Assembly (NCBI GenBank): GCA_000388065.2
Contig: KB932206.1
Source: Fonticula alba ATCC 38817
Lineage: Eukaryota; Protista; Nucleariida
Length of the DNA stretch: 28,560 bases
Direction: 5' to 3' (one strand)
The translations under genes were made by a program, and so were the position numbers. Positions 3,327-28,543 of the stretch are shown here, in pieces. A model generated the notes under the pieces. It did no database searches. It worked only from the letters and a program-made list of their open reading frames with translations, and had not been told where the DNA came from. Numbering within the stretch: the stretch's first letter is position 1; each line of letters begins with the position of its first letter.

Positions 3327-3717
3327 NNNNNNNNNNNNNNNNNNNNNNNNNNNNNNNNNNNNNNNNNNNNNNNNNNNNNNNNNNNNNNNNNNNNNNNNNN
3401 NNNNNNNNNNNNNNNNNNNNNNNNNNNNNNNNNNNNNNNNNNNNNNNNNNNNNNNNNNNNNNNNNNNNNNNNNNNNNNNNNNNNNNNNNNNNNNNNNNNN
3501 NNNNNNNNNNNNNNNNNNNNNNNNNNNNNNNNNNNNNNNNNNNNNNNNNNNNNNNNNNNNNNNNNNNNNNNNNNNNNNNNNNNNNNNNNNNNNNNNNNNN
3601 NNNNNNNNNNNNNNNNNNNNNNNNNNNNNNNNNNNNNNNNNNNNNNNNNNNNNNNNNNNNNNNNNNNNNNNNNNNNNNNNNNNNNNNNNNNNNNNNNNNN
3701 NNNNNNNNNNNNNNNNN
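3327..3717. other. Assembly gap (N run)
   Basis: Ns flanked by poly-G; may hide the PKC start exon. Confidence 1.
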
Positions 3718-6084: not shown

Positions 6085-6815
6085 NNNNNNNNNNNNNNNN
6101 NNNNNNNNNNNNNNNNNNNNNNNNNNNNNNNNNNNNNNNNNNNNNNNNNNNNNNNNNNNNNNNNNNNNNNNNNNNNNNNNNNNNNNNNNNNNNNNNNNNN
6201 NNNNNNNNNNNNNNNNNNNNNNNNNNNNNNNNNNNNNNNNNNNNNNNNNNNNNNNNNNNNNNNNNNNNNNNNNNNNNNNNNNNNNNNNNNNNNNNNNNNN
6301 NNNNNNNNNNNNNNNNNNNNNNNNNNNNNNNNNNNNNNNNNNNNNNNNNNNNNNNNNNNNNNNNNNNNNNNNNNNNNNNNNNNNNNNNNNNNNNNNNNNN
6401 NNNNNNNNNNNNNNNNNNNNNNNNNNNNNNNNNNNNNNNNNNNNNNNNNNNNNNNNNNNNNNNNNNNNNNNNNNNNNNNNNNNNNNNNNNNNNNNNNNNN
6501 NNNNNNNNNNNNNNNNNNNNNNNNNNNNNNNNNNNNNNNNNNNNNNNNNNNNNNNNNNNNNNNNNNNNNNNNNNNNNNNNNNNNNNNNNNNNNNNNNNNN
6601 NNNNNNNNNNNNNNNNNNNNNNNNNNNNNNNNNNNNNNNNNNNNNNNNNNNNNNNNNNNNNNNNNNNNNNNNNNNNNNNNNNNNNNNNNNNNNNNNNNNN
6701 NNNNNNNNNNNNNNNNNNNNNNNNNNNNNNNNNNNNNNNNNNNNNNNNNNNNNNNNNNNNNNNNNNNNNNNNNNNNNNNNNNNNNNNNNNNNNNNNNNNN
6801 NNNNNNNNNNNNNNN
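6085..6815. other. Assembly gap (N run)
   Basis: Ns. Confidence 1.
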
Positions 6816-10247: not shown

Positions 10248-10511
10248 NNNNNNNNNNNNNNNNNNNNNNNNNNNNNNNNNNNNNNNNNNNNNNNNNNNNN
10301 NNNNNNNNNNNNNNNNNNNNNNNNNNNNNNNNNNNNNNNNNNNNNNNNNNNNNNNNNNNNNNNNNNNNNNNNNNNNNNNNNNNNNNNNNNNNNNNNNNNN
10401 NNNNNNNNNNNNNNNNNNNNNNNNNNNNNNNNNNNNNNNNNNNNNNNNNNNNNNNNNNNNNNNNNNNNNNNNNNNNNNNNNNNNNNNNNNNNNNNNNNNN
10501 NNNNNNNNNNN
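10248..10511. other. Assembly gap (N run)
   Basis: Ns in the ESA1/WrbA-like divergent intergenic region. Confidence 1.
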
Positions 10512-11399: not shown

Positions 11400-12690
11400 T
11401 CTCCCTGTCCACATGATACCAAGCAACCTGATACACAACCAGAACCAGAACCGATCTGATGCCGAGTCTGGTGGCCAGGCGAGGGCCCACCCAGGCGCGC
11501 GGGGGGGGGGGGGGGGGGGGGGGGGGGGCGGAGGGGGTGAAAATGCGTCCTGTGCATGGGCGCCAGTGCGCGCTGGCTCACCCGACCAGGGGTGGGGGGG
11601 ATGTTCATTTTCGTTCGGTCAGGGCGGCATCCCGCCCCCGGGCGGGCGGGCTGGGGGGGGGGGCGGGGGGGGGGCAGACAGCTGGCTCCTTTCTTTTCGT
11701 CTGGGTGGCCGCATAAGTTGGGACCAACTTGGAACGTAAGCCGGCGCGTGCCTGTGTATTTTCTCGCTCTCGCTCTCCTTCTTTCTCCCTGGCTGTCTCT
11801 GGGAGCATGGAGCAACAACCGAGGCCGGGCCCGGGCGCCGAGCGGACTGGCAGGCGGCAGCGCCCTCACCGGTTTGCCCGGTGTGCCGGCCGGGGGGAGG
11901 GGGGGGGGGTCAGGCATTCGTTCTCCTGGTTGCCGCAATCGACCCCGCTCATTTCGCGGAGCTCGGGTCTCATATGGCTGATTTGTCCGGGCCCCGGCCC
12001 CTGTCCTCTTTCGCGCCCCCGGGGCAGGGCGCCGGCGCGCGGACGAGGCACCCGAGGGCGCCTTTCTTGCGTAAGGAGAGGGCCCGGCAGCGCGAGCAAC
12101 GGGGGCGATGCGGGGCCGGCTCTATTCGCCGGGCGGCGCGTGTGACTGCCGGCGTGTGCCGCGCCCCGGTGTGCGGCCTCCATGTCCCCCCGCCCCCCGG
12201 CCCGGAGGCCAGGGTTGCGAGGATGTCGCCTGGCCCGGGGCTGCCCGGGTGCGCGCGGCATCACAACCGGGGAACCCCTCAGGTCACCGGGGGGCATTCC
12301 TCCGCTCGCCGGGCGGGGGAGCCGGCGGCCCAGAGGGGGCGGGCGCGGCGCAGTAGTGGGGCGCGGGCGGAGAAACGGCTCTGCCCGCGGCGCGCCGCCC
12401 TAGGGGGGGGGGGGTGCGGCGAGCCCGATCGCCCGCACCTGTGCCCGTAGCCAGCCAATCCCCCTGCAGAGCGAACGGCATCGCAGACCTTCGGCCGATG
12501 GAATGCTCGGAGGTCATTCACCAGCCGCAAGTATGTGCCCTCGGTCGTGGTATTCGGGGAAGGCAGCGCCTCTTAGCTGGCTGACGCCAGGCAGCGGGGC
12601 GCCGCGGGCGGAGGCTCCTCGCCCGGCATGCGCATGCGAGCGATTGGCGTGCGCGTGTGTGCTGGCTGTGGTGTACGGGGCGTGGGGGCC

Positions 12691-12830
12691 GTGTGTGTGT
12701 GTGTGTGTGTGTGTATGTGAGTGTATGCCAGCCCGCGGGCGCCGAAGAAAATGCTGCGGCCGAGGTCCCAAGAGTTGGCAACATCAGTCCGCGGCCTGGT
12801 GTGTGTGTGTGTGTATGTGTGTGTGTGTGT
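12691..12830 (+). repeat. Two imperfect (TG)n microsatellites
   Basis: (TG)n runs at about 12691-12725 and 12799-12830. Confidence 0.85.
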
Positions 12831-13214
12831 GACACCAACCACAGCACCAGCACCGGTGGCGGCATTTCTTCGCGCCGGAGTCGGGCCAGCGGGCAGAGGG
12901 CAAACGGGCGCGTTCCCTGCCCTCGCCCTGCCCTCCACCCCACGGCCTGAGCGGCCCGGGGTGCCAGGAAGCCCGGGTACAACTGCCAGGATGAGTTCTA
13001 TCCCGGCCCCCCGCGCCGGCCGGTTCCGTGACCCTGCTGTTGTGGCGGTGTCCTTTTGTGCGGGGAGCCCGTGGCTGGGTCTGCGGTGCGGAAAGTTCGA
13101 TGCCCGCAAGTTGACCTGGCGTTGAGGCGGGGGATCGGGGTCCCGGCGGGAGAGCGGATCAGAGGGGCGGCGGGGCCTGTTTTTTTTTGTCGCCGCGGGC
13201 GTGTCCGCATGTGC

Positions 13215-13245: not shown

Positions 13246-13574
13246 CTGCTCATGGCGATGTGTATGGGTGGCCGGCACGCACACGGGCATATGTCCGGGA
13301 TGCATGGGGTGCGCGTGTTTGCCGCCCCTCGGGGGTGCCGCGCAGCCCGCGGTCCCCCGGGACCGGGCATTTTTGGCCAACCGCCGTGTCACCGCCGTCG
13401 TCCCCGGATTGCTCGTCACCCATGCTTTCCCCCTTCCCTTCAGGTTGGACTTGCCCCCTCCCCCCCCCCCCCGCCCGCCTCTCCTTCATCACCCCTCCCC
13501 TCCTCCCCCCCCCCCCTCCCGCCCCCCAGCGATCCCCTCCTGGCACAAATCCCCCTGTCCATGCGCTGGTTGAC

Positions 13575-16500
13575 ATGAGCCAGGGTGTACGTGAGCGCGT
13601 CCTCGCACATCCCCTTTCGGTGGTCCTCCTGCCCTGTCAAACGCCCGCCCACCTCTGACCGATTGCATCCCCCCCCCCACCCACCTCGCTCCCAGTCCAT
13701 TACCGTCTACCTGCCTGATGGTACGACGCGGACCACATCCGCGTCCAATTCCAGCACCGTCAAGGATCTCCTCCGCCCGCTGCTGCAGAAGACGCAGTTC
13801 GCCTCCTCCGACGAGCATGTCTTCGTCGTGACCAGTCGCTCCGACCCGGAGGGTATGTGCTCCTTCGGTTCCGCCTCCCGACCTGCCTGCCTTGCACCCG
13901 ACTCACCCCCGGCCCCTCGCCCTGCCCTGCCGCCAGGCAAGCGCCTCCAGGATGACGACCGCCCGCTGATGCTGCAGCACTCCTGGGGCACCGGCAACCC
14001 CAGTCGCTCGCGCATTCGCCTGGTCAACCCCCGGGACTATGTGCGGGTCCTGATCCGCGGCATCCCCGAGGCCGGGCCCGACGACACGCCGTACGGCATC
14101 TACTCGTCGCTCAACCAGTCGGCCGAGGTCCTGTGTGATCTGGTGGCCAGTGATCTGGGTCTGGCCAAGCGCCGGAAGTATGTCCTGCTGGATGTCTTCG
14201 GCGGCATGGAGGAGCGCCAGCTCCAGCGCGACCAGAAGCCCCTGTCCATTGCCCTGTCTCTGTCGGAGAAGCTCGGCCTCGGTGCCTCGGAGTTCCACTT
14301 TGTCTTCACCGTTTCCCAGAGCAGCTGGATCTCCAAGTCCCTGGGGCGCCTGGTCGGCACGAACACCGCCAACCCGGCCCCGAGCAACCTGGACGTCGGG
14401 TCCCCCACTATCCAGGTGGGCGCGCCCACCCTTCCGGTCGAGTCGCCGACCACCACGGCCCTGGCGGCCATGACCGGTGTCCCGGCCGGCATCGACCTGA
14501 ATGCCGCCATGCCGGAGCTCTCCGAGCTGGACCAGCAGTTCCTGCGCCTGCTTGTGCGTGTGCCCCCCCCTTGCGCGGACATGGATGGCTCGCCACCCGC
14601 CGGGCCACGGGCCGCGGCCCATGTCCGCCCCTTCTCTCGGGTCCCGCGGCCTTCGGCCCGTCTCGCCCCCCCCCCCTCCCTCTGACCCGCCATTGTCCTT
14701 CCCCCTTTCCCTCCTTCGCCTCCCCAGGATGAGATCAACATCGTCGATCCGAAGCTCCGCGAGCACATGATGTCCCAGGAGCCCCGGCGCAAGTGGGTCA
14801 TCATCATGCAAAATCGCCCGGAGTGGACGGCCCGCGATCGGGGCATCACGTCCGGCGCCTCGGCCCCCGGGCTGCCATCCGGCCCGCAGGCCGGCGCCGC
14901 GCCGGCCGCCACTCGCATCGACCGCGACAAGAGCCCCACGCACTACATCGACATGCTGGGCAATCGGTACGAAGCACCACGTTTTTCCCCCTGCTCTTGG
15001 CATCTTCCCCGATTGCACCCTCCTCACTCTCGTGGGTTTGCCGCCGCCGCCCCCCCCCCTCCCCTCTCGCCCCTCCCTTGGCTTTCAGCAACATTCAGCT
15101 CCGCGAGATCGCCAGTCTGCGTGTGCAGCTGAACTGCGCCACGGCCACGTGGATGAGCGAATTCCTGGAGCTCAATGGTATCGGCAGCCTGGAGTCGCTG
15201 ATGGAGCGCATCCAGAAGCGCATCATCGCCCAGTCTTCGGCCGCTGGGCGCCGGGTTTGCTCGGAGACCGACTCCGATCTGCAGCTGGAGGGCCTGCGCT
15301 GTGTGCGCACCCTGATGAACATCGACTCGGCCCGGTCGGACATCCTCAACCGGCCGGCCGTGGTGCTGGCGATTGCCACCTGTCTGGATGCGGAGAACGA
15401 GCGCCTGGCCATCCTGGCCTGCGAGCTGCTGGCCGGTATTTGCATGTTGCCTGCCGCCTCGGCCGAGGCGGATGCCCTCTCCGGGCATGCGTTGGTTCTT
15501 GATGCGCTGACCGAGCTCCCGTCGCGCATTGGCGAGCCCTACCGTTTCCAGCGTCTGGTCGAGATCGTCGGGTCTTCGCGCCAGGAGTCCAATGAGCTGC
15601 GCACCATCGCCATGAGCCTGATCAATGGTGCGTGCCCTCCCTTTGTCCCTCCCTCCCTCTCTCTTCCCTCGCTCTCATCCTGCTTCTTTTGCACGTTTCT
15701 GTGGGGCTTCCCCCCCCCCCCCTGCCTCCCCTGCCTCCCCCCCTCCCATACTGACTTCCTCCTCGGGACCTTCCTTTGCTCGACCTCCCCCTGTCCGCCT
15801 GCTGTGCCCTTCGCCATCCGATAGCCGTTGTCAACTGCCCGACCGAGCTGGCGCAGCGCCTGCGCCTGCGCGATGAGCTCTCCCGTCGTGGGCTGATGAA
15901 TGTCCTGCGCATTGCCCAGCTGGATGCCACGTCGGACCTGCGCCAGCAGATCCTCCTCTACATGGAGGAGAGCGAGTCCGACCAGCTGGACGGCGTGACC
16001 AATGGCATCAGCGCCTCCTCGCTCAATGACACCGCCGGCAAGACCAGCGAGTCCATGAACACCACCCTGTCGGCGGCGCAGGAGCTCTGCCAGCTGGGCC
16101 GGTCGAACCCAAGCATCGAGGTGCACCTGCTGACCATCCTCCGCACCCTGACCACCCTGGCCAAGCAGACCCCCCAGACGACGGCGACTCTGGGCAGTGC
16201 GGCAGCCAGCGCGGCGGTCCTGGCCAACAAGGCCATGGCCCAGTCGGCTGCCTCGCTGTCCTGGTCCATCCTGGAGCTCCTGTCGCAGTACCTGTCGCAG
16301 CAGTCCCCCGACACCAATCTCGCGGCACCGGATGCCTGGTACAAGTTGTGGTCGTCCTTCCTCAACATCACCGAGGCGGTCTTGCGCATTCCCATCCCGG
16401 AGACCATGCGCCCGGATTACCGGCAGAAGGTGGAGAAGTCCGCCGTGGAGGCCATCGCCGCGCTGGATGCCGCCAACAACCAGATCTCCCGCCTGAACAG

Positions 16501-19413
16501 CGCCATCGAGAGCTTCGACAATGAGCTGGCCTCGCGCGACAGTGAGCTGGCCATTCGCAACCAGGATCTGGCCCTGCGCACGCATGAGCTTGCGATGCGC
16601 GACCAGGAGATCATCAACCGCGACCAGGAGATCGCTCGCCTTCAGGGCGTCGTGGAGGCTCAGGCGGTCGAGATCGCCGCCAAGCCGGTGGCCACTGTTG
16701 CCGCTCCTGCGGTGGCGGCGGGCCCCTGCGCCAAGTGTGCCGAGGGTGTCCCGGTGCCCGCGGCGCCGGCCCCCATCTACATCCTGCAGCCGGGCATGGA
16801 TGTCCCTGCCGGGGCCAATGTCGTCTCCCTGCCGCCGGGTGTGGAGCTCCCCACCCGGACCGTGGTGGTGGCCGCCGCCGATGTGCCCGCCGCTGGTGCT
16901 GGCGCCGGCGCTGTCGGGGCCGGCAGCAGCGGGTCCATTGCCTCCTCGGGCGGCATGTCGGCCTCGCAGCTGCCCCCGCCGCCGGGGGCCTCCCCTACCA
17001 CCAGCCGCTTGAGTGTGGCCACTGATGGCTCGCTGCCATCGCCGATTGGTGGCTCTGGCTCGCCGCTGCCCCCGGCTTCGCCGTCGGCTGCGGGCGCCGG
17101 TGGCCCGCCGCCGTGCCCGCCGCCTCCGGGTTCGGCCGGTGGCCCGCCGCCGCCGCCCCCTCTGCCGGGCATGGGTGGCCCGCCGCCGCCTCCCCCGCCT
17201 CCGGGTGGTCCTGGTGGCCCGCCGCCGCCGCCGCCGCCTCCGGGCATGGGTGCTGGTACGTGGTTCCCCTCTTCCTCCTCGCTGCTCTGTTCTCTCTCTC
17301 TCTCTCTCTCTCTTTTCCTCTGCTCTGCTCTGCTCTCTTTTCTTCTCCTCTCTTTTGCTCTCTTTTCTTCTCCTCTCTTTTGCTCTCTTTTCTTCTCCTC
17401 TCTTTTTCTCTCTTTTGCTCTCCCCTCCTCTCCCCTCCTCTCCCCTCCCCTCCTGACCATCATGCCCCCCCCCCCCTGCTCAGGCCCCGCTCTGCCGCCC
17501 AAGCGCACCATCAAGCCGAATGTCCCCATGCGCCAGATGAACTGGGCCAAGCTGCCTGCCAACAAGATCAAGGATTCCATCTGGAGCGACATCAACGACG
17601 AGAAGGTGTCGGTGGATATCAATGTCCTGGAGAGCTTCTTCCAGCGTGACGCGCCCGCCGCCTCGACCAAGACCCGCCTACAGGGGCTGGACGATGTGGC
17701 CGACGCGCCGACCAAGCCCAACTCGATCACCCTGATCGACTTCAACCGGGCCAACAACCTGGCCATTTTGCTGTCGCGCTTCAAGATGTCCAACTTCGAC
17801 ATCAAGACCGCGGTCTTGAAGATGGACGAGGAGAAGCTCTCGATCGAGCAGCTGCGCGCCCTGCGGCAGTTCACCCCGACCACCGAGGAGGTGGCCCTCG
17901 TGCGCGAGTACGACGGCGATCTGGCCCTGCTGGGCCCGGCCGAGCGGTACTTCCGTGAGATGATCTCCATTTCCAATTTGGAGACCCGCCTAGATGCCAT
18001 GATCCTCAAGCGCCAGTTCGACAAGCTGATGCTGGACCTCACCCCGGAGGTGGAGTCCATCAACAAGGCCAACAACGAGCTGCTCAAGTCCAAGGTCTTC
18101 AAGGAGCTGCTGCAGCATGTGCTGGCCATCGGCAACTACATGAACGGCTCGTCCTTCCGTGGTGGCGCCTACGGTTTCCGCATTGACAGTATCATCAAGG
18201 TGCGTGTGTCCGTCGTCCTGGCCAGCAGAGTGCAGCGCCCGGGTTTTTTTTTTTCTTTTTCTGCTGCATGTGGCTGGGCGCCCTCCTCCGGCCCCCGGCC
18301 TCCGCCTTCCGCGCCCCTGTCCCCTGTTTCTTTCCGGTTCTCCTTCTCTGACCCTGCTCCCTGATTTCCCTCTGTCCCTCTCTGTCTGTTTTTTTTCTGT
18401 TTTTTCTCCCCCCCCCCTCCCCCTGCCTCCCTTTGCCTGTTTGTTTTGCTCTTTCTCTCCCCCCTCTCGCCTCCCTTTGCTTGTTTGTTTTTGTCCTTTC
18501 TCTTCCCCTCTCGCCTCTCTTTGCCAAACCCCAGTTCGCCGAGACCAAGGCCACTCCGAACGCCCCGTTCCCCACGCTGCTGCACTACCTGGCGCACTAC
18601 TTCGACAAGATCGACGAGTCCTTCGTGGACTTCTCCGACACCATGCCCAACCTGGAGCCCGCGTCGCAGACCTCCCTGTCGGGCCTGCAAGCGCAGGTGG
18701 CCGAGCTTCGCCAGAACATCAGCCGCGTGGAAAAGATGCTGGAGCAGATGTCCCGCGTGTCCATGGTTGCCGGCGGCGGGTCGGACGACGCCTTTGCCAG
18801 TGTCATGTCGGCCTTCATTCGCAGCGCCAGCCCTCAGGTGGCCGAGCTGACCCGCCTGCTGGAGGAGTCGGCTGCCGGGTTTAAGAATGTGCTGAAGAAG
18901 TTCGCCGAGGAGGAGCTCAACCAGCCGGAGGACTTCTTCCGGGTGATTGTCAGCTTCTCGCAGGCCCTGCGCCGCGCCCGCAAGGAGAACCAGGAGCAGG
19001 AGGCGCAGAAGGAGGCGGATGCCCGCCGCGCGGCCAATGCCGCCAATGCCCTGGCCGCATCGGCCATTGCCCGCCGGAACAAGGCCGCTGGTTCGGCCGA
19101 GGGGGGTGCCGGTGCGTCGGCCGGCTTGCCGGCTGTCGGGGGCTTGGCCCCGCCGCCGCCACTGGGCCCGGGCGGCTTGAAGCCCCTGGCTCCGATGTCC
19201 CTGTCTGGCGTTCGTGCCGGGGCCAGCCCGGCCTCGCCGGGCCTGGTGCCCAATGCCTCCGGGTCGGATGCCGTGGGCGGCTCGGCCAGCAAGGACTCCG
19301 AGTTCGACAACATGCTGCGCGGCCTGCGCGGCGGTGGCTCGGCCTTCCGCCGCCATCGCCAGTCGGTCATGATCCCGCAGTCGCCGCAGACGCCGCAGGC
19401 GCCGCAGACGTAG
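13575..19413 (+). CDS. Diaphanous-related formin (RA-RA-GBD/FH3-coiled coil-FH1-FH2-DAD)
   Basis: Inferred exons 13575-13586 (start uncertain), 13696-13852, 13937-14553, 14728-14966, 15089-15627, 15825-17255, 17484-18199, 18535-19413, all phases compatible. GBD LLDEINI...KWVIIMQN; FH3 ASLRVQL...WMSEFLELNG, CVRTLMN; poly-Pro FH1; FH2 MRQMNWAKL, RANNLAILL, LAIGNYMNG, GAYGFRIDSIIKFAETK; DAD FDNMLRGLRGGGSAFRRHR. Confidence 0.93.
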
Positions 19414-19696: not shown

Positions 19697-20539
19697 CTAT
19701 TTCGGGGAGGACCGCCGCCGGCGGCGGTGGCGCCGAGAGGCGGATGGTGACCGGGATCGGGTCCGAGATCGACCCCGAGCGCGGGACGATCGCTCGCGCG
19801 ATCGACGTCGTGAGGTCCGGCCTGAGGAGGATCGCCGGGAGGATCGAGCGCGGGTCCGGCGTCGGGCACGCTCCGGCGAGGAGTCTGAGCTACTGCCATC
19901 GTCGGACAGTGACGATGATGTCCAGCCGGCCGCCTCGGCTGGGTGCCCCGGCCGCCAGCAGGCAGGCAGACAGGCAGACATGGGCGAGGGGGGGGGGGGG
20001 GGGTCATGGTGTGAGGTGCACATGTCACAGGAGGGCGCCAAGCAAACGGGCGGGGCGGAGAGGCTTGCTTCCGTACCTCGCAACAGATCGAAGGCCTGCG
20101 GACTGAGGATGAAGGGCCCAAGATCGACGGTGGACTGACGGGTGTCCGGGAGCCGGGGAAAGGGCACGGCGCCCGGGGGCGGCGATCCGGGCCTCTCATC
20201 TGAAGGTGGCCTCTCGTCGGAGGTGTCAGCCGAATCATCCTCATCGTCGGCCAGCAGGCTGGCCGCCTTCTCGGCGATGTGTCGCTCGAGGACGCTATCA
20301 TAGTACAGCTTGGCGTTCGGGTGATTCGGCTGTAGCTGGAGCACGCGCTCAAAGTCGTCCAGCGCTCGTGCAAGGTGGCGGGTATTGGCCAGAGCCGCCC
20401 CGCGCGCAACGAGACAGTCCAGGTGTTCGGGATCCAGGTCGAGGGCCGAGTTGTAGCTATTGATGGCCTTGTCGAAGTGGCCGGCACGGGCCTGCTCGAT
20501 GCCGGCCACCGTGCTGTTGGGTGCGCGCGCGCGTGTGTA

Positions 20540-20570
<31 letters not shown>

Positions 20571-21342
20571 GGGGGCGACAAAATGAGAAGGGTGCACTGG
20601 CAGCGAGGGCCGAGGCCGAAACAAGACGCACAGCTCGCTGGCCCAGCGCTTCAAGGGCAGGTTATGGCCATGCTGGCGGTCGGCCTGCTGACCGGCGGTG
20701 ACCGCGCCGGCGAACACATCCGGCACACTTTGGCGGAGGCGCGGGCAATGGGTCCAGGGTCAGGGGATGCGCATTTTCTTCTTGGCAGGGGCCACACAGG
20801 AAGGGCGGCAGGGGAGGGAGGGGGGGAGGGAGGGGGGGGGGAGGAGCCGGGCCCGGAAGAAATCCGGCTCGACCGAGGGGACGGGCGAGGAGGAGCGAAA
20901 TATACCTGCTGTTGGAGAAGATGAACGCCCGGTGTCCGGCATAGGGGCAGCCTGGCCCCAGGCCATACAGCGCATACTCCGGCTGACTAACTAGCCAGGC
21001 CTCGATGGGGGCCTGCCCCGGGAGGGGCGGCGGGTCTGTATACGTGTGGGCCTGGTCCACGGCCTCCTGGATGAAGATCTGTCGGACCGGCGGCACAGGC
21101 GAGGGAGCCGGCGCACCGCCCGGCCAGCGGGCCGTGGAAAAAGTCCCTGCCAGGGTACGGTCATCGAGGGACAGGCGCAGATCATCGCCCGGCCCGGCCG
21201 CGTCCGGGCGGTCCCCAGCCCGGCAAGTGCGCCACAGGAGATCCAATCGGCAGTGGACGCGCCCCTCGATCAGCGAGCAATCCGGCCGGGCCTCGGCCCG
21301 GCTCAGTGCCGCAATCACCGCCGGGACGGTCAAGGTGGGCAT
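19697..21342 (-). CDS. TTC14: TTC14-like tetratricopeptide-repeat protein with RS-rich C-terminus
   Basis: Inferred exons 21342(start uncertain)-20906, 20727-20632, 20513-20077, 19938-19697. TPR block YNSALDLDPEHLDCLVARGAALANTRHLARALDDFERVLQLQPNHPNAKLY resembles the TTC14 TPRs as I recall them. Ends in an Arg/Ser-rich tail (RRRSRERSSRARGRSRTRSRSP). The N-terminal exon is poorly recognisable. Confidence 0.7.
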
Positions 21343-23386: not shown

Positions 23387-23617
23387 NNNNNNNNNNNNNN
23401 NNNNNNNNNNNNNNNNNNNNNNNNNNNNNNNNNNNNNNNNNNNNNNNNNNNNNNNNNNNNNNNNNNNNNNNNNNNNNNNNNNNNNNNNNNNNNNNNNNNN
23501 NNNNNNNNNNNNNNNNNNNNNNNNNNNNNNNNNNNNNNNNNNNNNNNNNNNNNNNNNNNNNNNNNNNNNNNNNNNNNNNNNNNNNNNNNNNNNNNNNNNN
23601 NNNNNNNNNNNNNNNNN
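23387..23617. other. Assembly gap (N run)
   Basis: Ns. Confidence 1.
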
Positions 23618-24261: not shown

Positions 24262-24609
24262 NNNNNNNNNNNNNNNNNNNNNNNNNNNNNNNNNNNNNNN
24301 NNNNNNNNNNNNNNNNNNNNNNNNNNNNNNNNNNNNNNNNNNNNNNNNNNNNNNNNNNNNNNNNNNNNNNNNNNNNNNNNNNNNNNNNNNNNNNNNNNNN
24401 NNNNNNNNNNNNNNNNNNNNNNNNNNNNNNNNNNNNNNNNNNNNNNNNNNNNNNNNNNNNNNNNNNNNNNNNNNNNNNNNNNNNNNNNNNNNNNNNNNNN
24501 NNNNNNNNNNNNNNNNNNNNNNNNNNNNNNNNNNNNNNNNNNNNNNNNNNNNNNNNNNNNNNNNNNNNNNNNNNNNNNNNNNNNNNNNNNNNNNNNNNNN
24601 NNNNNNNNN
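24262..24609. other. Assembly gap (N run)
   Basis: Ns. Confidence 1.
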
Positions 24610-26886: not shown

Positions 26887-28543
26887 CTACCGGCGCCGCG
26901 CGGCGGCGGCCCGGGCCTGCTGCTCGGCCGTCGCGACCATGCGCAGAGCCTCCTCAAGCCGGGCACGGGCGGTCGGGATGTCGGCATATTGGACGGCCGA
27001 GGCGGCGTGCCGGGCAAGGCGCTCGATGCCGGCCAGCGTGGCCGGGTCATACATGTCGGCCGGGTCATCGTCATCCGAAAAGTCGTCCTCCTCATCGAGG
27101 AAGTTCTTGGACATGATGACCGGTGACCGGCCGACCGGCTCATCACGGAAGGCATCCGGCACCGAGGTGGCCGTCCGGCCGGAGAGCGTCGGCGACCGGG
27201 CGGTGGGCGACTGGTGCTGCTGGTGCCGGGAGTGGTGGTGGTGGTGGTGCTGCTGCTGCTGCTGCTGCGCCGGCGGCGGCGGCTGGTGGTAATCCGACCG
27301 AGGGTCATGGGGGGAGGGGCTGCCGCTGGGGCTGCCGCCGCCGCTCCCGGGGCCACCATAGCCCGGATGCGGCGCCAAGTGCCCGTGGGAGTGGCCGCCG
27401 AAGCCCTGGTGCTGCTGATGGTGGCCCGCCCCGCCGGCATACTCGCCGTGGAAGTTGTTCGGCGAGGTGGACGCCGAAAGGGATGGGGTGGGGATCGGGT
27501 CGGTGTCCATGGCATGGTGCTGGTGCTGGTGCTGGTGCTGGGTCATGGAGGCCGAGCCAGGGAAGGAGTTGTCCCCGCGCGGGGCGTCCCACTGGGTGGC
27601 CGCCATGGCCGGCGAGGTGGGAGACCCGGCCGCCGGGTCCTGCTTGTCGAAGGAGGTCGGCGGGCTGGGGAGGCGGTTTTCCCGGATGGCCCGGGAAATC
27701 TCCACCGCGCGCCACTTGGCATACTTGATCTTGTTGTCGATGTCCTCGCGTGGCATCCCGGCTGGCGAGCCATCCGGCGGGCTGCCGCTGGGGACCGGCA
27801 TGCTGTTGAGCACCTCGAAGAAGCAGGCCGCCACGAGGAAGTTCTGGGAGGTCTTCCTGCGGGCGGGGGGCGGGGGGGNNNNNNNNNNNNNNNNNNNNNN
27901 NNNNNNNNNNNNNNNNNNNNNNNNNNNNNNNNNNNNNNNNNNNNNNNNNNNNNNNNNNNNNNNNNNNNNNNNNNNNNNNNNNNNNNNNNNNNNNNNNNNN
28001 NNNNNNNGGGGGAGGACAGCAGGCGGTCAGGGTCGGGGCGAGGGAGGGGCAGAAGGGCAAGCGAGAAGCAGGGGCGCACATGGCCGGTGTGCCCTTGCGA
28101 TCTTCATCATCCGCCGCGAGGAACACCCGGGCAGCCATGTTCTCGACGCGCTTGCGGGAGGAGTGCAGGTCGGCGAAATCCGGGCGCATCTCCACGGTGG
28201 GCTTCATCTTTTCCACATGGCCAAGAAGCTGCAGGAGGAAGGGCTGTGAGGCGCTCTTCTCCGGCGGCGGCAGCGTCGACATCTGCTTGACGCCATTCTC
28301 CACGGCGCACAGGAAGGCTGCGAGGCGATGCGGGCGGGAGGGGGGGGGCCGATGGAGCCGGGGCAAGGGGGTGAGCGGCCAGCGGGCGGGGCGAGGGGGA
28401 CCGGCCAAGGTGCGAGTCATGCGGCCCTGCAGCGCACCGTAGTACGAAACAATCGGATCAATGTCCTGCACCTCGCGGGCGCGCTGGACGTAGGTGGTGA
28501 TTGATTTCAGGCCGAGAGGGATGTCATGGTTGAAAGGCTCCAT
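26887..28543 (-). CDS. VTA1: Vta1/LIP5, ESCRT Vps4 cofactor (MIT-MIT, low-complexity linker, VSL)
   Basis: Exons 28543-28438, 28317-28080, 27856-26887 (intron 2 contains an N gap). DPIVSYY, ARVFLAADDEDRKG, NFLVAACFFEVL, KIKYAKWRAVEISRAIRE; C-terminal VSL ERLARHAASAVQYADIPTARARLEEAL. Confidence 0.93.
27879..28007. other. Assembly gap (N run)
   Basis: Ns within VTA1 intron 2. Confidence 1.

What the first reader, a model, noticed from the sequence alone, without database searches (positions are those of the whole stretch)
13575..14330. Formin with two N-terminal Ras-association-like domains ahead of its Rho-binding GBD
Seen: ~230 aa before the GBD form two ~90-aa ubiquitin-fold-like units. Unit 1 is SITVYLPDGTTRT...TVKDLLRPLLQK...KRLQDDDRPLMLQHSW...IRL. 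Unit 2 is YVRVLI...SAEVLCDLVASDLGL...YVLLDVFGGMEERQLQRDQKPLSI...FHFVF. Both carry an ERxLxxDxxPL-type motif. They are joined to the GBD by phase-consistent introns. Established: that motif is typical of RA domains, which bind Ras/Rap-GTP, and Diaphanous-related formins are normally opened by Rho binding the GBD to release the DAD. Inference: this is an actin nucleator that could integrate Ras/Rap and Rho inputs. I do not recall this architecture in a characterised formin.
Basis: partly seen in the sequence, partly recalled or inferred. Interest (0 to 1): 0.75.

Follow-up and report, generated by a model that had tools for sequence, protein, structure and literature searches.

The report
Fonticula formin with tandem RA domains
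The gene is a real actin-nucleating formin of the amoeba Fonticula alba that carries two Ras-association-like ubiquitin-fold domains before its Rho-binding region, but this gene's RA-plus-formin layout was already published in 2017, so it is a sound annotation and not a discovery.

Summary
The window is Fonticula alba. The stretch is the 5' end of an 8-exon gene (13575-13586 ... 18535-19413, + strand) encoding the 1529-aa protein H696_04048 / XP_009496195.1.

- **Domains.** Pfam finds RA (PF00788, 5e-11) and RA_3, then Drf_GBD, FH3 and FH2.
- **Fold.** AlphaFold2 models residues 1-190 as two beta-grasp units (pLDDT about 85-93). Unit 1 superposes on the Lamellipodin, afadin-HRAS and RIAM-Rap1 RA domains (Z 12-12.7). 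Unit 2 superposes on FERM-F1 and RalGDS (Z about 10).
- **Transcript.** Spliced contigs of 4.4-4.7 kb join every tested exon with GT..AG joints, including 14553/14728.

- There is a second, divergent RA-like unit.
- The tandem module is shared with about 25 Mortierellaceae formins, where Pfam mostly misses it.
- It is also shared with three uncultured eukaryote lineages, two to three of them with the same intron position.

Ras/Rap binding remains an inference. Unit 1 keeps the beta2 basic residue. Unit 2 and the fungal unit 1 do not.

The parts
13520..13574 (+). 5' UTR. Transcript contigs begin at 13520-13535. It holds a 5-codon uORF (ATG 13561, MRWLT, stop TGA 13576-13578) that overlaps the main ATG.
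   Evidence: and the sequence.
13575..13586 (+). Exon 1: start codon plus 3 codons (MSQG).
   Evidence: Joint 13586/13696, GT..AG, in four runs. Matches P0001 residues 1-4.
13696..13852 (+). Exon 2: first half of RA unit 1 (beta1-beta2-alpha1-beta3; aa 5-57).
   Evidence: Pfam RBD 1.1e-6, RA_2 and RA on this exon alone. AF2 strands 3-9, 15-21 and 46-50, helix 26-36.
13853..13936 (+). Intron 2: 84 nt, phase 1, in frame and free of stops. Its position is conserved in L001 and L006, and is about one residue off in L002.
13937..14025 (+). Second half of RA unit 1 (aa 57-86), with the GKRLQDDDRPLMLQHSW motif.
   Evidence: Pfam RA 3-81. Alignments to Grb7 and afadin RA. VIA Z 12.7/12.3/12.1 to the Lamellipodin, afadin-HRAS and RIAM-Rap1 RA domains.
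14029..14352 (+). RA-like unit 2 (aa 88-186) plus a trailing helix (aa 188-195). Includes the basic cluster AKRRKY and the motif EERQLQRDQKPL.
   Evidence: AF2 strands 91-96, 107-112, 138-144, 148-151 and 177-182, helices 119-129 and 158-169. RA_3 and RA are weak in F. alba, but 10 of 11 family members hit RA. VIA Z 10.3 to PTPN21 F1 and 9.6 to RalGDS.
14353..14511 (+). Disordered Pro/Thr/Ala-rich linker (aa 196-248).
   Evidence: pLDDT below 50 for residues 196-249.
14512..15446 (+). Diaphanous GTPase-binding domain (aa 249-461). It spans the end of exon 3, exon 4 (14728-14966) and exon 5 (15089-15627); the introns are 14554-14727 and 14967-15088.
   Evidence: Pfam Drf_GBD 2.9e-29. Joints.
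15486..15988 (+). FH3 / DID region (aa 475-576), across intron 5 (15628-15824).
   Evidence: Pfam Drf_FH3 1.4e-16. Contig pieces 15088-15626 and 15824-17090.
16973..17255 (+). FH1 poly-proline region (about aa 905-999) at the end of exon 6 (15825-17255).
   Evidence: Poly-Pro runs in P0001. Tandem repeats at 17096-17252.
17501..18969 (+). FH2 domain (aa 1005-1382). It lies in exon 7 (17484-18199) and exon 8 (18535-19413); the introns are 17256-17483 and 18200-18534.
   Evidence: Pfam FH2 4.4e-87. The lengths of the spliced contigs fit the whole CDS.
19294..19362 (+). DAD-like motif DSEFDNMLRGLRGGGSAFRRHRQ (aa 1491-1513). The stop codon is at 19411-19413.
   Evidence: D1491, D1495, R1499, G1500, L1501, G1504 and R1512 are invariant with the Mortierellaceae. 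Sequence.

Best explanation
The stretch encodes the N-terminal tandem Ras-association/ubiquitin-fold module of the Fonticula alba Diaphanous-related formin H696_04048. This protein is 1529 aa and belongs to the 'Fungi-2' subtype.

Shown here:
- One spliced mRNA encodes RA1 - RA2 - disordered linker - Drf GBD - FH3/DID - coiled coil - FH1 - FH2 - DAD.
- Both N-terminal units fold as beta-grasp domains of the RA/FERM-F1 kind.
- The module is conserved in Mortierellaceae fungi and in three uncultured eukaryote lineages.

Inferred:
- The formin is autoinhibited by DID-DAD binding and is opened by a Rho-family GTPase at the GBD, as in other DRFs.
- The tandem module adds a second targeting or activating input.
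- RA1 keeps the beta2 basic residue (R16) and the alpha1 C-terminal Lys (K36). It would bind a GTP-loaded Ras/Rap-family GTPase by beta-sheet pairing with switch I.
- RA2 lacks the beta2 basic residue but carries a conserved KRRK patch. It would act as a structural partner and/or a contact for acidic membrane.
- The net effect would be to place or prime actin assembly where Ras/Rap and Rho signals coincide.
For: - **Identity and gene model.** P0001 is a 100% match of 1529 aa, named H696_04048. Spliced contigs of 4.37-4.67 kb from 2 samples join exons 1-6 with GT..AG joints. They run about 1.79 kb beyond 17090, which equals the rest of the CDS.
- **Domains.** RA 5.1e-11, RA_3 8e-9, Drf_GBD 2.9e-29, FH3 1.4e-16, FH2 4.4e-87.
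- **Fold.** The AF2 model has two beta-grasp units at pLDDT about 85-93. Tandem ubiquitin-like proteins top the Foldseek list. RA domains solved in complex with HRAS or Rap1 top the VIA list for unit 1, at Z 11.3-12.7 and rmsd about 2 A.
- **PDB profile.** The best sequence hit is the Grb7 RA domain, 3.2e-5.
- **Ras-contact residue.** F. alba R16 aligns with afadin K58. It is K or R in L001, L002 and L006. [quoted passage not shown]
- **DAD.** The motif is conserved with the fungal orthologues.
- **Conservation.** The architecture recurs in L001, L002 and the Mortierellaceae.
Against: - No binding data exist for this protein.
- Unit 2 of F. alba falls below the Pfam gathering score when scanned alone, and its profile finds nothing in PDB sequences.
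- Unit 2 has Gly where a beta2 Lys/Arg would be.
- The Mortierellaceae orthologues have Glu at the unit 1 beta2 position and acidic residues in alpha1. A Ras-binding role for unit 1 is therefore not conserved across the family.
- In the known formins with an N-terminal ubiquitin superfold, direct GTPase binding could not be confirmed for FHOD1, and ForC uses a basic surface for membrane localisation (PMC4111664).
- RA domains bind Ras-family GTPases with affinities ranging from 0.3 to 500 uM (PMC8163975 abstract).
Confidence: 0.55

Rival explanations
1. The two ubiquitin-fold units are not GTPase binders. They would be a structural or membrane/partner-binding module, like FERM F0/F1, FHOD1 G2 or ForC. 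Such a module would localise the formin through its basic patch (KRRK) or through another protein, and Rho at the GBD would be the only GTPase input.
For: - The beta2 and alpha1 basic residues of unit 1 are replaced by acidic ones in the Mortierellaceae.
- Unit 2 lacks the beta2 basic residue, and its conserved basic cluster lies at the alpha1-beta3 junction.
- SNX17/27, PTPN21, FAK and myosin FERM-F1 lobes score nearly as high as RA domains.
- There is precedent in FHOD1 and ForC (PMC4111664).
Against: - The best sequence and structure matches of unit 1 are bona fide Ras/Rap-binding RA domains: Grb7/14, afadin, RIAM and Lamellipodin.
- The beta2 K/R is kept in four independent Fonticula-type lineages.
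Confidence: 0.35
2. The module is a variant of the FHOD/ForC-type 'G2' ubiquitin-fold GBD, making this an FHOD-like formin and not a Drf with an added RA module.
For: Both have ubiquitin-fold domains N-terminal to an armadillo DID. There is a faint Pfam FH3_FHOD1-3 hit (0.015, 15.5 bits).
Against: - A full Drf_GBD (2.9e-29) lies between the RA units and the FH3.
- FHOD1 is not among the top 50 structural matches.
- Pruyne 2017 places the gene in Fungi-2 and found no FHOD relatives in Holomycota.
Confidence: 0.05
3. Gene-model artefact: the RA exons belong to a separate upstream transcript or are chance open reading frame in GC-rich DNA.
For: In DNA of about 68% GC, long stop-free frames are common.
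Against: - Single spliced contigs join the RA exons to GBD/FH3/FH1 in four runs.
- Collinear homologues exist in other organisms, some with the same intron position.
Confidence: 0.02

Closest known systems
Fonticula alba H696_04048 as described by Pruyne 2017 (PLoS One 12:e0186081; 'Fungi-2' formin subtype)
   Same: It is the same gene. [quoted passage not shown]
   Different: - The paper reports one RA domain; here a second, divergent RA-like unit is modelled.
- Transcript support is added here.
- The paper treats the RA as peculiar to the fonticulid, but the module is also present in Mortierellaceae and in environmental lineages.
FHOD1/FHOD3 and Dictyostelium ForC (G2-DID formins)
   Same: Both have an N-terminal ubiquitin-superfold domain of the Ras-effector kind ahead of an armadillo DID, followed by FH1-FH2-DAD (PMC4111664).
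   Different: - There the single ubiquitin fold replaces the Drf G region. Here two units precede an intact Drf_GBD.
- No sequence or top structural match to FHOD1 was found.
Tandem RA/RBD modules of afadin/Canoe, PLC-epsilon and RGS12/14
   Same: Two consecutive beta-grasp Ras-binding-type domains. Afadin RA1 is a top match (Z 12.3, 24% identity). The Atlas shape search returns nematode RA-domain, RGS14 and PLC (RA-bearing) clusters.
   Different: The downstream effector domains differ, and none of them is a formin. That the two units usually differ in GTPase binding in these proteins is recalled from memory, plus the title of PMC11698047.
Talin/kindlin F0-F1 double ubiquitin-like head
   Same: A tandem ubiquitin-like pair at the N-terminus of a cytoskeletal regulator. 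Talin F1 is a profile hit (E 0.002) and the talin head appears in the Foldseek list.
   Different: Talin continues into FERM F2-F3, not GBD-FH2. That talin F0/F1 bind Rap1 is from memory and was not tested here.
Dictyostelium ForG, a Ras-regulated Diaphanous-related formin (Junemann et al. 2016; from memory)
   Same: A formin proposed to link Ras signalling directly to actin assembly.
   Different: As recalled, ForG binds Ras through its GBD and has no separate RA domain. It was not examined here.

Membership tests
Diaphanous-related formin (GBD/FH3-FH1-FH2-DAD) | FH2 domain | tested here: met
   Pfam PF02181, 4.4e-87, aa 1005-1382.
Diaphanous-related formin (GBD/FH3-FH1-FH2-DAD) | Drf GBD and FH3/DID N-terminal to FH1 | tested here: met
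   PF06371 2.9e-29 (aa 249-461) and PF06367 1.4e-16 (aa 475-576).
Diaphanous-related formin (GBD/FH3-FH1-FH2-DAD) | Proline-rich FH1 directly before FH2 | tested here: met
   Poly-Pro runs at about aa 905-999 in P0001. They are invariant Pro columns in alignment A4.
Diaphanous-related formin (GBD/FH3-FH1-FH2-DAD) | C-terminal DAD (MDxLLxxL-like core plus a basic stretch) | tested here: met
   FDNMLRGLRGGGSAFRRHRQ. Its core residues are invariant with the Mortierellaceae. The comparison with the DAD consensus is from memory.
Diaphanous-related formin (GBD/FH3-FH1-FH2-DAD) | Autoinhibition released by Rho-GTP | not testable with these tools
   Needs biochemistry.
RA domain (Pfam PF00788 / RA clan), unit 1 | Score above Pfam's gathering cut-off | tested here: met
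   39.3-43.5 bits against a cut-off of 21. RBD also scores 27.3-28.9 bits against 25.7.
RA domain (Pfam PF00788 / RA clan), unit 1 | Beta-grasp fold that superposes on solved RA domains | tested here: met
   AF2 pLDDT about 85-90. Z 12.7 to 4gn1, 12.3 to 6amb and 12.1 to 4kvg, at rmsd about 2 A over 79-87 residues.
RA domain (Pfam PF00788 / RA clan), unit 1 | Basic residue in beta2 that coordinates Ras switch I (afadin K58) | tested here: met
   R16 aligns with afadin K58. The position is K or R in L001, L002 and L006, but Glu in the Mortierellaceae.
RA domain (Pfam PF00788 / RA clan), unit 1 | GTP-dependent binding of a Ras-family GTPase | not testable with these tools
   Needs pull-down, ITC or a complex prediction.
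RA domain (Pfam PF00788 / RA clan), unit 2 | Score above Pfam's gathering cut-off | tested here: inconclusive
   F. alba unit 2 scanned alone gives RA 15.9-16.3 bits; with 33 flanking residues it gives 23.7 bits (cut-off 21). RA_3 gives 18.5-22.4 bits (cut-off 27). The orthologous unit 2 of L001 scores 28.0 bits and of L002 24.5 bits. Ten of 11 family members hit RA at E<=0.01. The PDB profile search is blank.
RA domain (Pfam PF00788 / RA clan), unit 2 | Beta-grasp fold | tested here: met
   AF2 pLDDT about 86-93. Z 10.3 to PTPN21 F1, 10.1 to 2cs4 and 9.6 to RalGDS. Unit 2 of the Mortierella model gives Z 11.1 to the Lamellipodin RA and 10.4 to Grb14 RA-HRas.
RA domain (Pfam PF00788 / RA clan), unit 2 | Basic residue in beta2 | tested here: not met
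   F. alba and the Fonticula-type relatives have Gly at the position where the Mortierellaceae have Arg (HYRQIHV).
FHOD-type formin (G2-DID) | Ubiquitin-fold GBD directly abutting the DID, without a Drf G region, plus a FHOD-type FH3 | tested here: not met
   A full Drf_GBD lies between them. FH3_FHOD1-3 scores only 15.5 bits against a cut-off of 27.4.
'Fungi-2' formin subtype (Pruyne 2017) | Placement by FH2 and DID-DD phylogeny | not tested
   Taken from the paper's S1 Table. No tree was built here. The only full-length relatives found are fungal, from the Mortierellaceae, which is consistent.

The most novel reading that the evidence does not exclude
The tandem RA/ubiquitin-fold module may not be a fonticulid oddity. 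It may be an old, conserved feature of a Holomycota formin subfamily that includes Fonticula, Mortierellomycota and at least three uncultured lineages. Fungal annotation largely misses it, because Pfam calls it in very few orthologues. On this reading the subfamily is a direct Ras/Rap-to-actin effector that needs both Ras/Rap and Rho input. Which of the two units binds the GTPase may have switched between lineages: the beta2 basic residue is in unit 1 in Fonticula-type proteins and in unit 2 in Mortierellaceae.
Probability: 0.3. Interest if true: 0.5.

Novelty: already known. Interest (0 to 1): 0.25.

Why it matters
If the RA module does bind Ras/Rap, this formin subfamily would be a one-protein coincidence detector between Ras/Rap and Rho signalling. 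It sits in the lineage sister to fungi, which is relevant to how amoeboid motility and polarity control were wired before hyphal growth evolved. As it stands, the finding is a correct domain annotation of a published, uncharacterised gene. The modest added value has three parts:
- the second RA-like unit;
- transcript proof of the fusion;
- evidence that Mortierellaceae fungi and environmental protists share the module.

Tried and rejected
1. **phmmer of the RA-RA region against 1.84 billion representatives.** It returned only the gene itself plus three short metagenome fragments and no annotated full-length relative. The fragments turned out to be exons of collinear formin genes.
I therefore could not survey chytrid (SPPG_03515), Ustilago or nucleariid Fungi-2 formins for a cryptic module.
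3. **Unit 2 profiles against PDB sequences.** Nothing was significant.
4. **ESM Atlas by features and by shape.** The results were RA, RBD and ubiquitin-like clusters, with no formin cluster. These are leads only.
5. **Papers.** The chytrid actin-network preprint and the Toret 2022 Fonticula paper say nothing about RA-formins.
6. **Taxonomic placement of L001, L002 and L006.** Not resolved. They score about equally against F. alba and Mortierella.
7. Read laying was limited to 13300-17090 to stay clear of the FH1/intron 6 repeats, so the exon 6/7 and 7/8 joints rest on contig length and homology, not on observed joints.
Full report
**What is there**

The window is GC-rich eukaryotic DNA. A phmmer scan of the translated stretch against 1.84 billion representative proteins returned a 1529-aa protein that is 100% identical. 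Public sources name it hypothetical protein H696_04048 of Fonticula alba (XP_009496195.1, UniProt A0A058Z5T8).

Reading splice signals in the sequence gives eight exons on the + strand:
- 13575-13586
- 13696-13852
- 13937-14553
- 14728-14966
- 15089-15627
- 15825-17255
- 17484-18199
- 18535-19413

Their summed coding length is 1529 codons, the same as the public protein. For whole-protein work I used the database protein P0001 that the tool returned.

**Transcript evidence**

Four runs from 2012 (two samples, one study) hold 64-65% of the sampled words of 13300-16300, which is about the exonic share. Laid on 13300-17090, each run gives one contig of 4.37-4.67 kb. Each contig starts at 13520-13535. 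The pieces lie on 13586|13696, 13851/2|13936/7, 14553|14728, 14965/6|15088/9 and 15626|15824, and then run on to 17090.

The first four joints are listed as GT..AG joints. About 1.79 kb of each contig extends beyond the laid stretch, which equals the rest of exon 6 plus exons 7 and 8 and a short 3' UTR.

Because the contigs lack every intron, the runs must be cDNA. The RA exons are therefore part of the same mRNA as GBD, FH3 and FH1, and by length FH2. They rest on contig length, on Pfam FH2 continuity and on the public model.

**Domains**

| Pfam family | E-value | Residues |
|---|---|---|
| RA PF00788 | 5.1e-11 | 3-81 |
| RA_3 | 8e-9 | two stretches |
| Drf_GBD | 2.9e-29 | 249-461 |
| Drf_FH3 | 1.4e-16 | 475-576 |
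| FH2 | 4.4e-87 | 1005-1382 |

These are the hits on P0001. Poly-proline FH1 precedes FH2. The C-terminus carries DSEFDNMLRGLRGGGSAFRRHRQ, whose core is invariant with the fungal orthologues and looks like a DAD.

Unit 1 alone passes the RA and RBD cut-offs. Unit 2 alone is borderline in F. alba. However, the orthologous unit 2 of L001 (28.0 bits) and of L002 (24.5 bits) passes, and 10 of 11 family members hit RA at E<=0.01 with no competing family.

**Fold**

AlphaFold2 was run on a 9-row alignment. It models residues 1-190 at pLDDT about 85-93 as two beta-beta-alpha-beta-beta-alpha-beta units, followed by a disordered linker (196-249) and the first GBD helix.

Foldseek's best matches are linear di-ubiquitin, ISG15, the USP7 ubiquitin-like domains and the talin head, which are all tandem ubiquitin-like proteins.

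VIA-align gives these matches for unit 1:

| Target | PDB | Z |
|---|---|---|
| Lamellipodin RA | 4gn1 | 12.7 |
| Afadin RA1-HRAS | 6amb | 12.3 (24% identity) |
| RIAM-Rap1 | 4kvg | 12.1 |
| Grb14 RA-HRas | 4k81 | 11.3 |

For unit 2 the same call gives PTPN21 F1 (Z 10.3), 2cs4 (Z 10.1) and RalGDS (Z 9.6). FERM-F1 lobes score almost as high as RA domains, so the fold alone does not prove Ras binding. A family profile finds the Grb7 RA domain in the PDB at 3.2e-5.

**Relatives**

The three short hits are exons of intron-bearing genes on metagenome contigs. L001 (54% GC) and L002-L005 (54% GC) are collinear with P0001 from residue 57 to about 1456. They carry unit 1, unit 2, Drf_GBD, FH3 and FH2. 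L006-L008 (25% GC) carry unit 1 and unit 2 before the contig ends.

The phase 1 intron in the Gly codon after 'PE' is at the same place in F. alba, L001 and L006, and within one residue in L002.

A word search with P0001 found Mortierella sp. AD094 BGX26_012598. Its residues 4-200 align collinearly with F. alba 3-190 at 27% identity, including EERQLADDESP and HFVFTVPDSWISK, and they are followed by GBD, FH3 and FH2. A region search then found 25 Mortierellaceae clusters that share this N-terminus. Precomputed Pfam lists an RA-type family for only one of them.

AlphaFold2 of the Mortierella hygrophila N-terminus again gives two beta-grasp units (pLDDT 83.7, pTM 0.78). Its unit 2 matches Lamellipodin, Grb14 and afadin RA domains at Z 10-11.

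**Is it new?**

No. Pruyne 2017 (PMC5628938) analysed the Fonticula alba formins and lists H696_04048 as 'Fungi-2' in its S1 Table. [quoted passage not shown]

The public protein also already carries PF00788 and PF23010 in precomputed Pfam. Ubiquitin-superfold N-terminal domains are known in FHOD1 and ForC as well (PMC4111664).

**How it probably works (inference)**

The GBD-DID and DAD elements predict the usual DRF autoinhibition, relieved by a Rho-family GTPase. [quoted passage not shown]

- In unit 1 this residue aligns with F. alba R16 and with K or R in the three environmental lineages. The Mortierellaceae have Glu there and acidic residues in alpha1.
- In unit 2 the Fonticula-type proteins have Gly where the Mortierellaceae have Arg. 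The Fonticula-type proteins instead carry a conserved K(K/R)(K/R)K patch after alpha1.

I therefore rate 'RA1 binds a Ras/Rap GTPase and RA2 supports it or contacts membrane' as the most likely reading, at about 0.55. The rival, a module that does not bind GTPases and serves membrane or partner targeting, is at about 0.35. FHOD1 and ForC are precedents for the rival.

**Verdict**

The Ras/Rap-plus-Rho integration idea is reasonable but unproven. The novelty claim is refuted by a 2017 paper on this very gene. Interest is low to moderate.

Noticed in passing
window 13561-13578: A 5-codon upstream ORF (ATG CGC TGG TTG ACA TGA) lies inside the roughly 45-nt 5' UTR. Its stop overlaps the main start codon (ATGA), which could allow termination-reinitiation control.
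   Followed up: partly
window 13853-13936 and 17256-17483: Intron 2 (84 nt) and intron 6 (228 nt) are in frame and free of stops. Their retention would insert 28 aa into RA unit 1, or 76 aa between FH1 and FH2.
   Followed up: partly
L001:1-4300, L002:1960-7020, L006:5230-5840: Three uncultured eukaryote lineages (GC 54%, 54% and 25%) carry homologues of this tandem-RA formin. Their taxonomic identity is unresolved. L006 also carries a PP2A B56 gene upstream.
   Followed up: partly
P0010 residues about 145-155, compared with P0012-P0030: The Mortierella sp. AD094 gene model lacks the segment '...YIFSQLKVNEEG.EE' (beta3 of unit 2) that other Mortierellaceae have. This is probably a splice-model error in the public annotation.
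   Followed up: no
window 3327-3717, 6085-6815, 10248-10511, 23387-23617, 24262-24609, 27879-28007: Six runs of N (129-731 bases; assembly gaps or masking) explain the low-GC bins in the composition profile.
   Followed up: yes
window about 12600-12900: GT/CA dinucleotide microsatellites lie upstream of the gene. They show up as CVCVCV and HTHTHT in ORF translations.
   Followed up: no
window 19697-20581 (- strand): A convergent downstream ORF has a TPR-like sequence (…AINSYNSALDLDPEHLDCLVARGAAL…) followed by an Arg/Ser-rich tail. It was not analysed.
   Followed up: no
window 16523-16609: A 21-nt tandem repeat (about 4 copies) encodes a heptad-like ELA.RD.EL repeat in the coiled-coil region between FH3 and FH1.
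   Followed up: no
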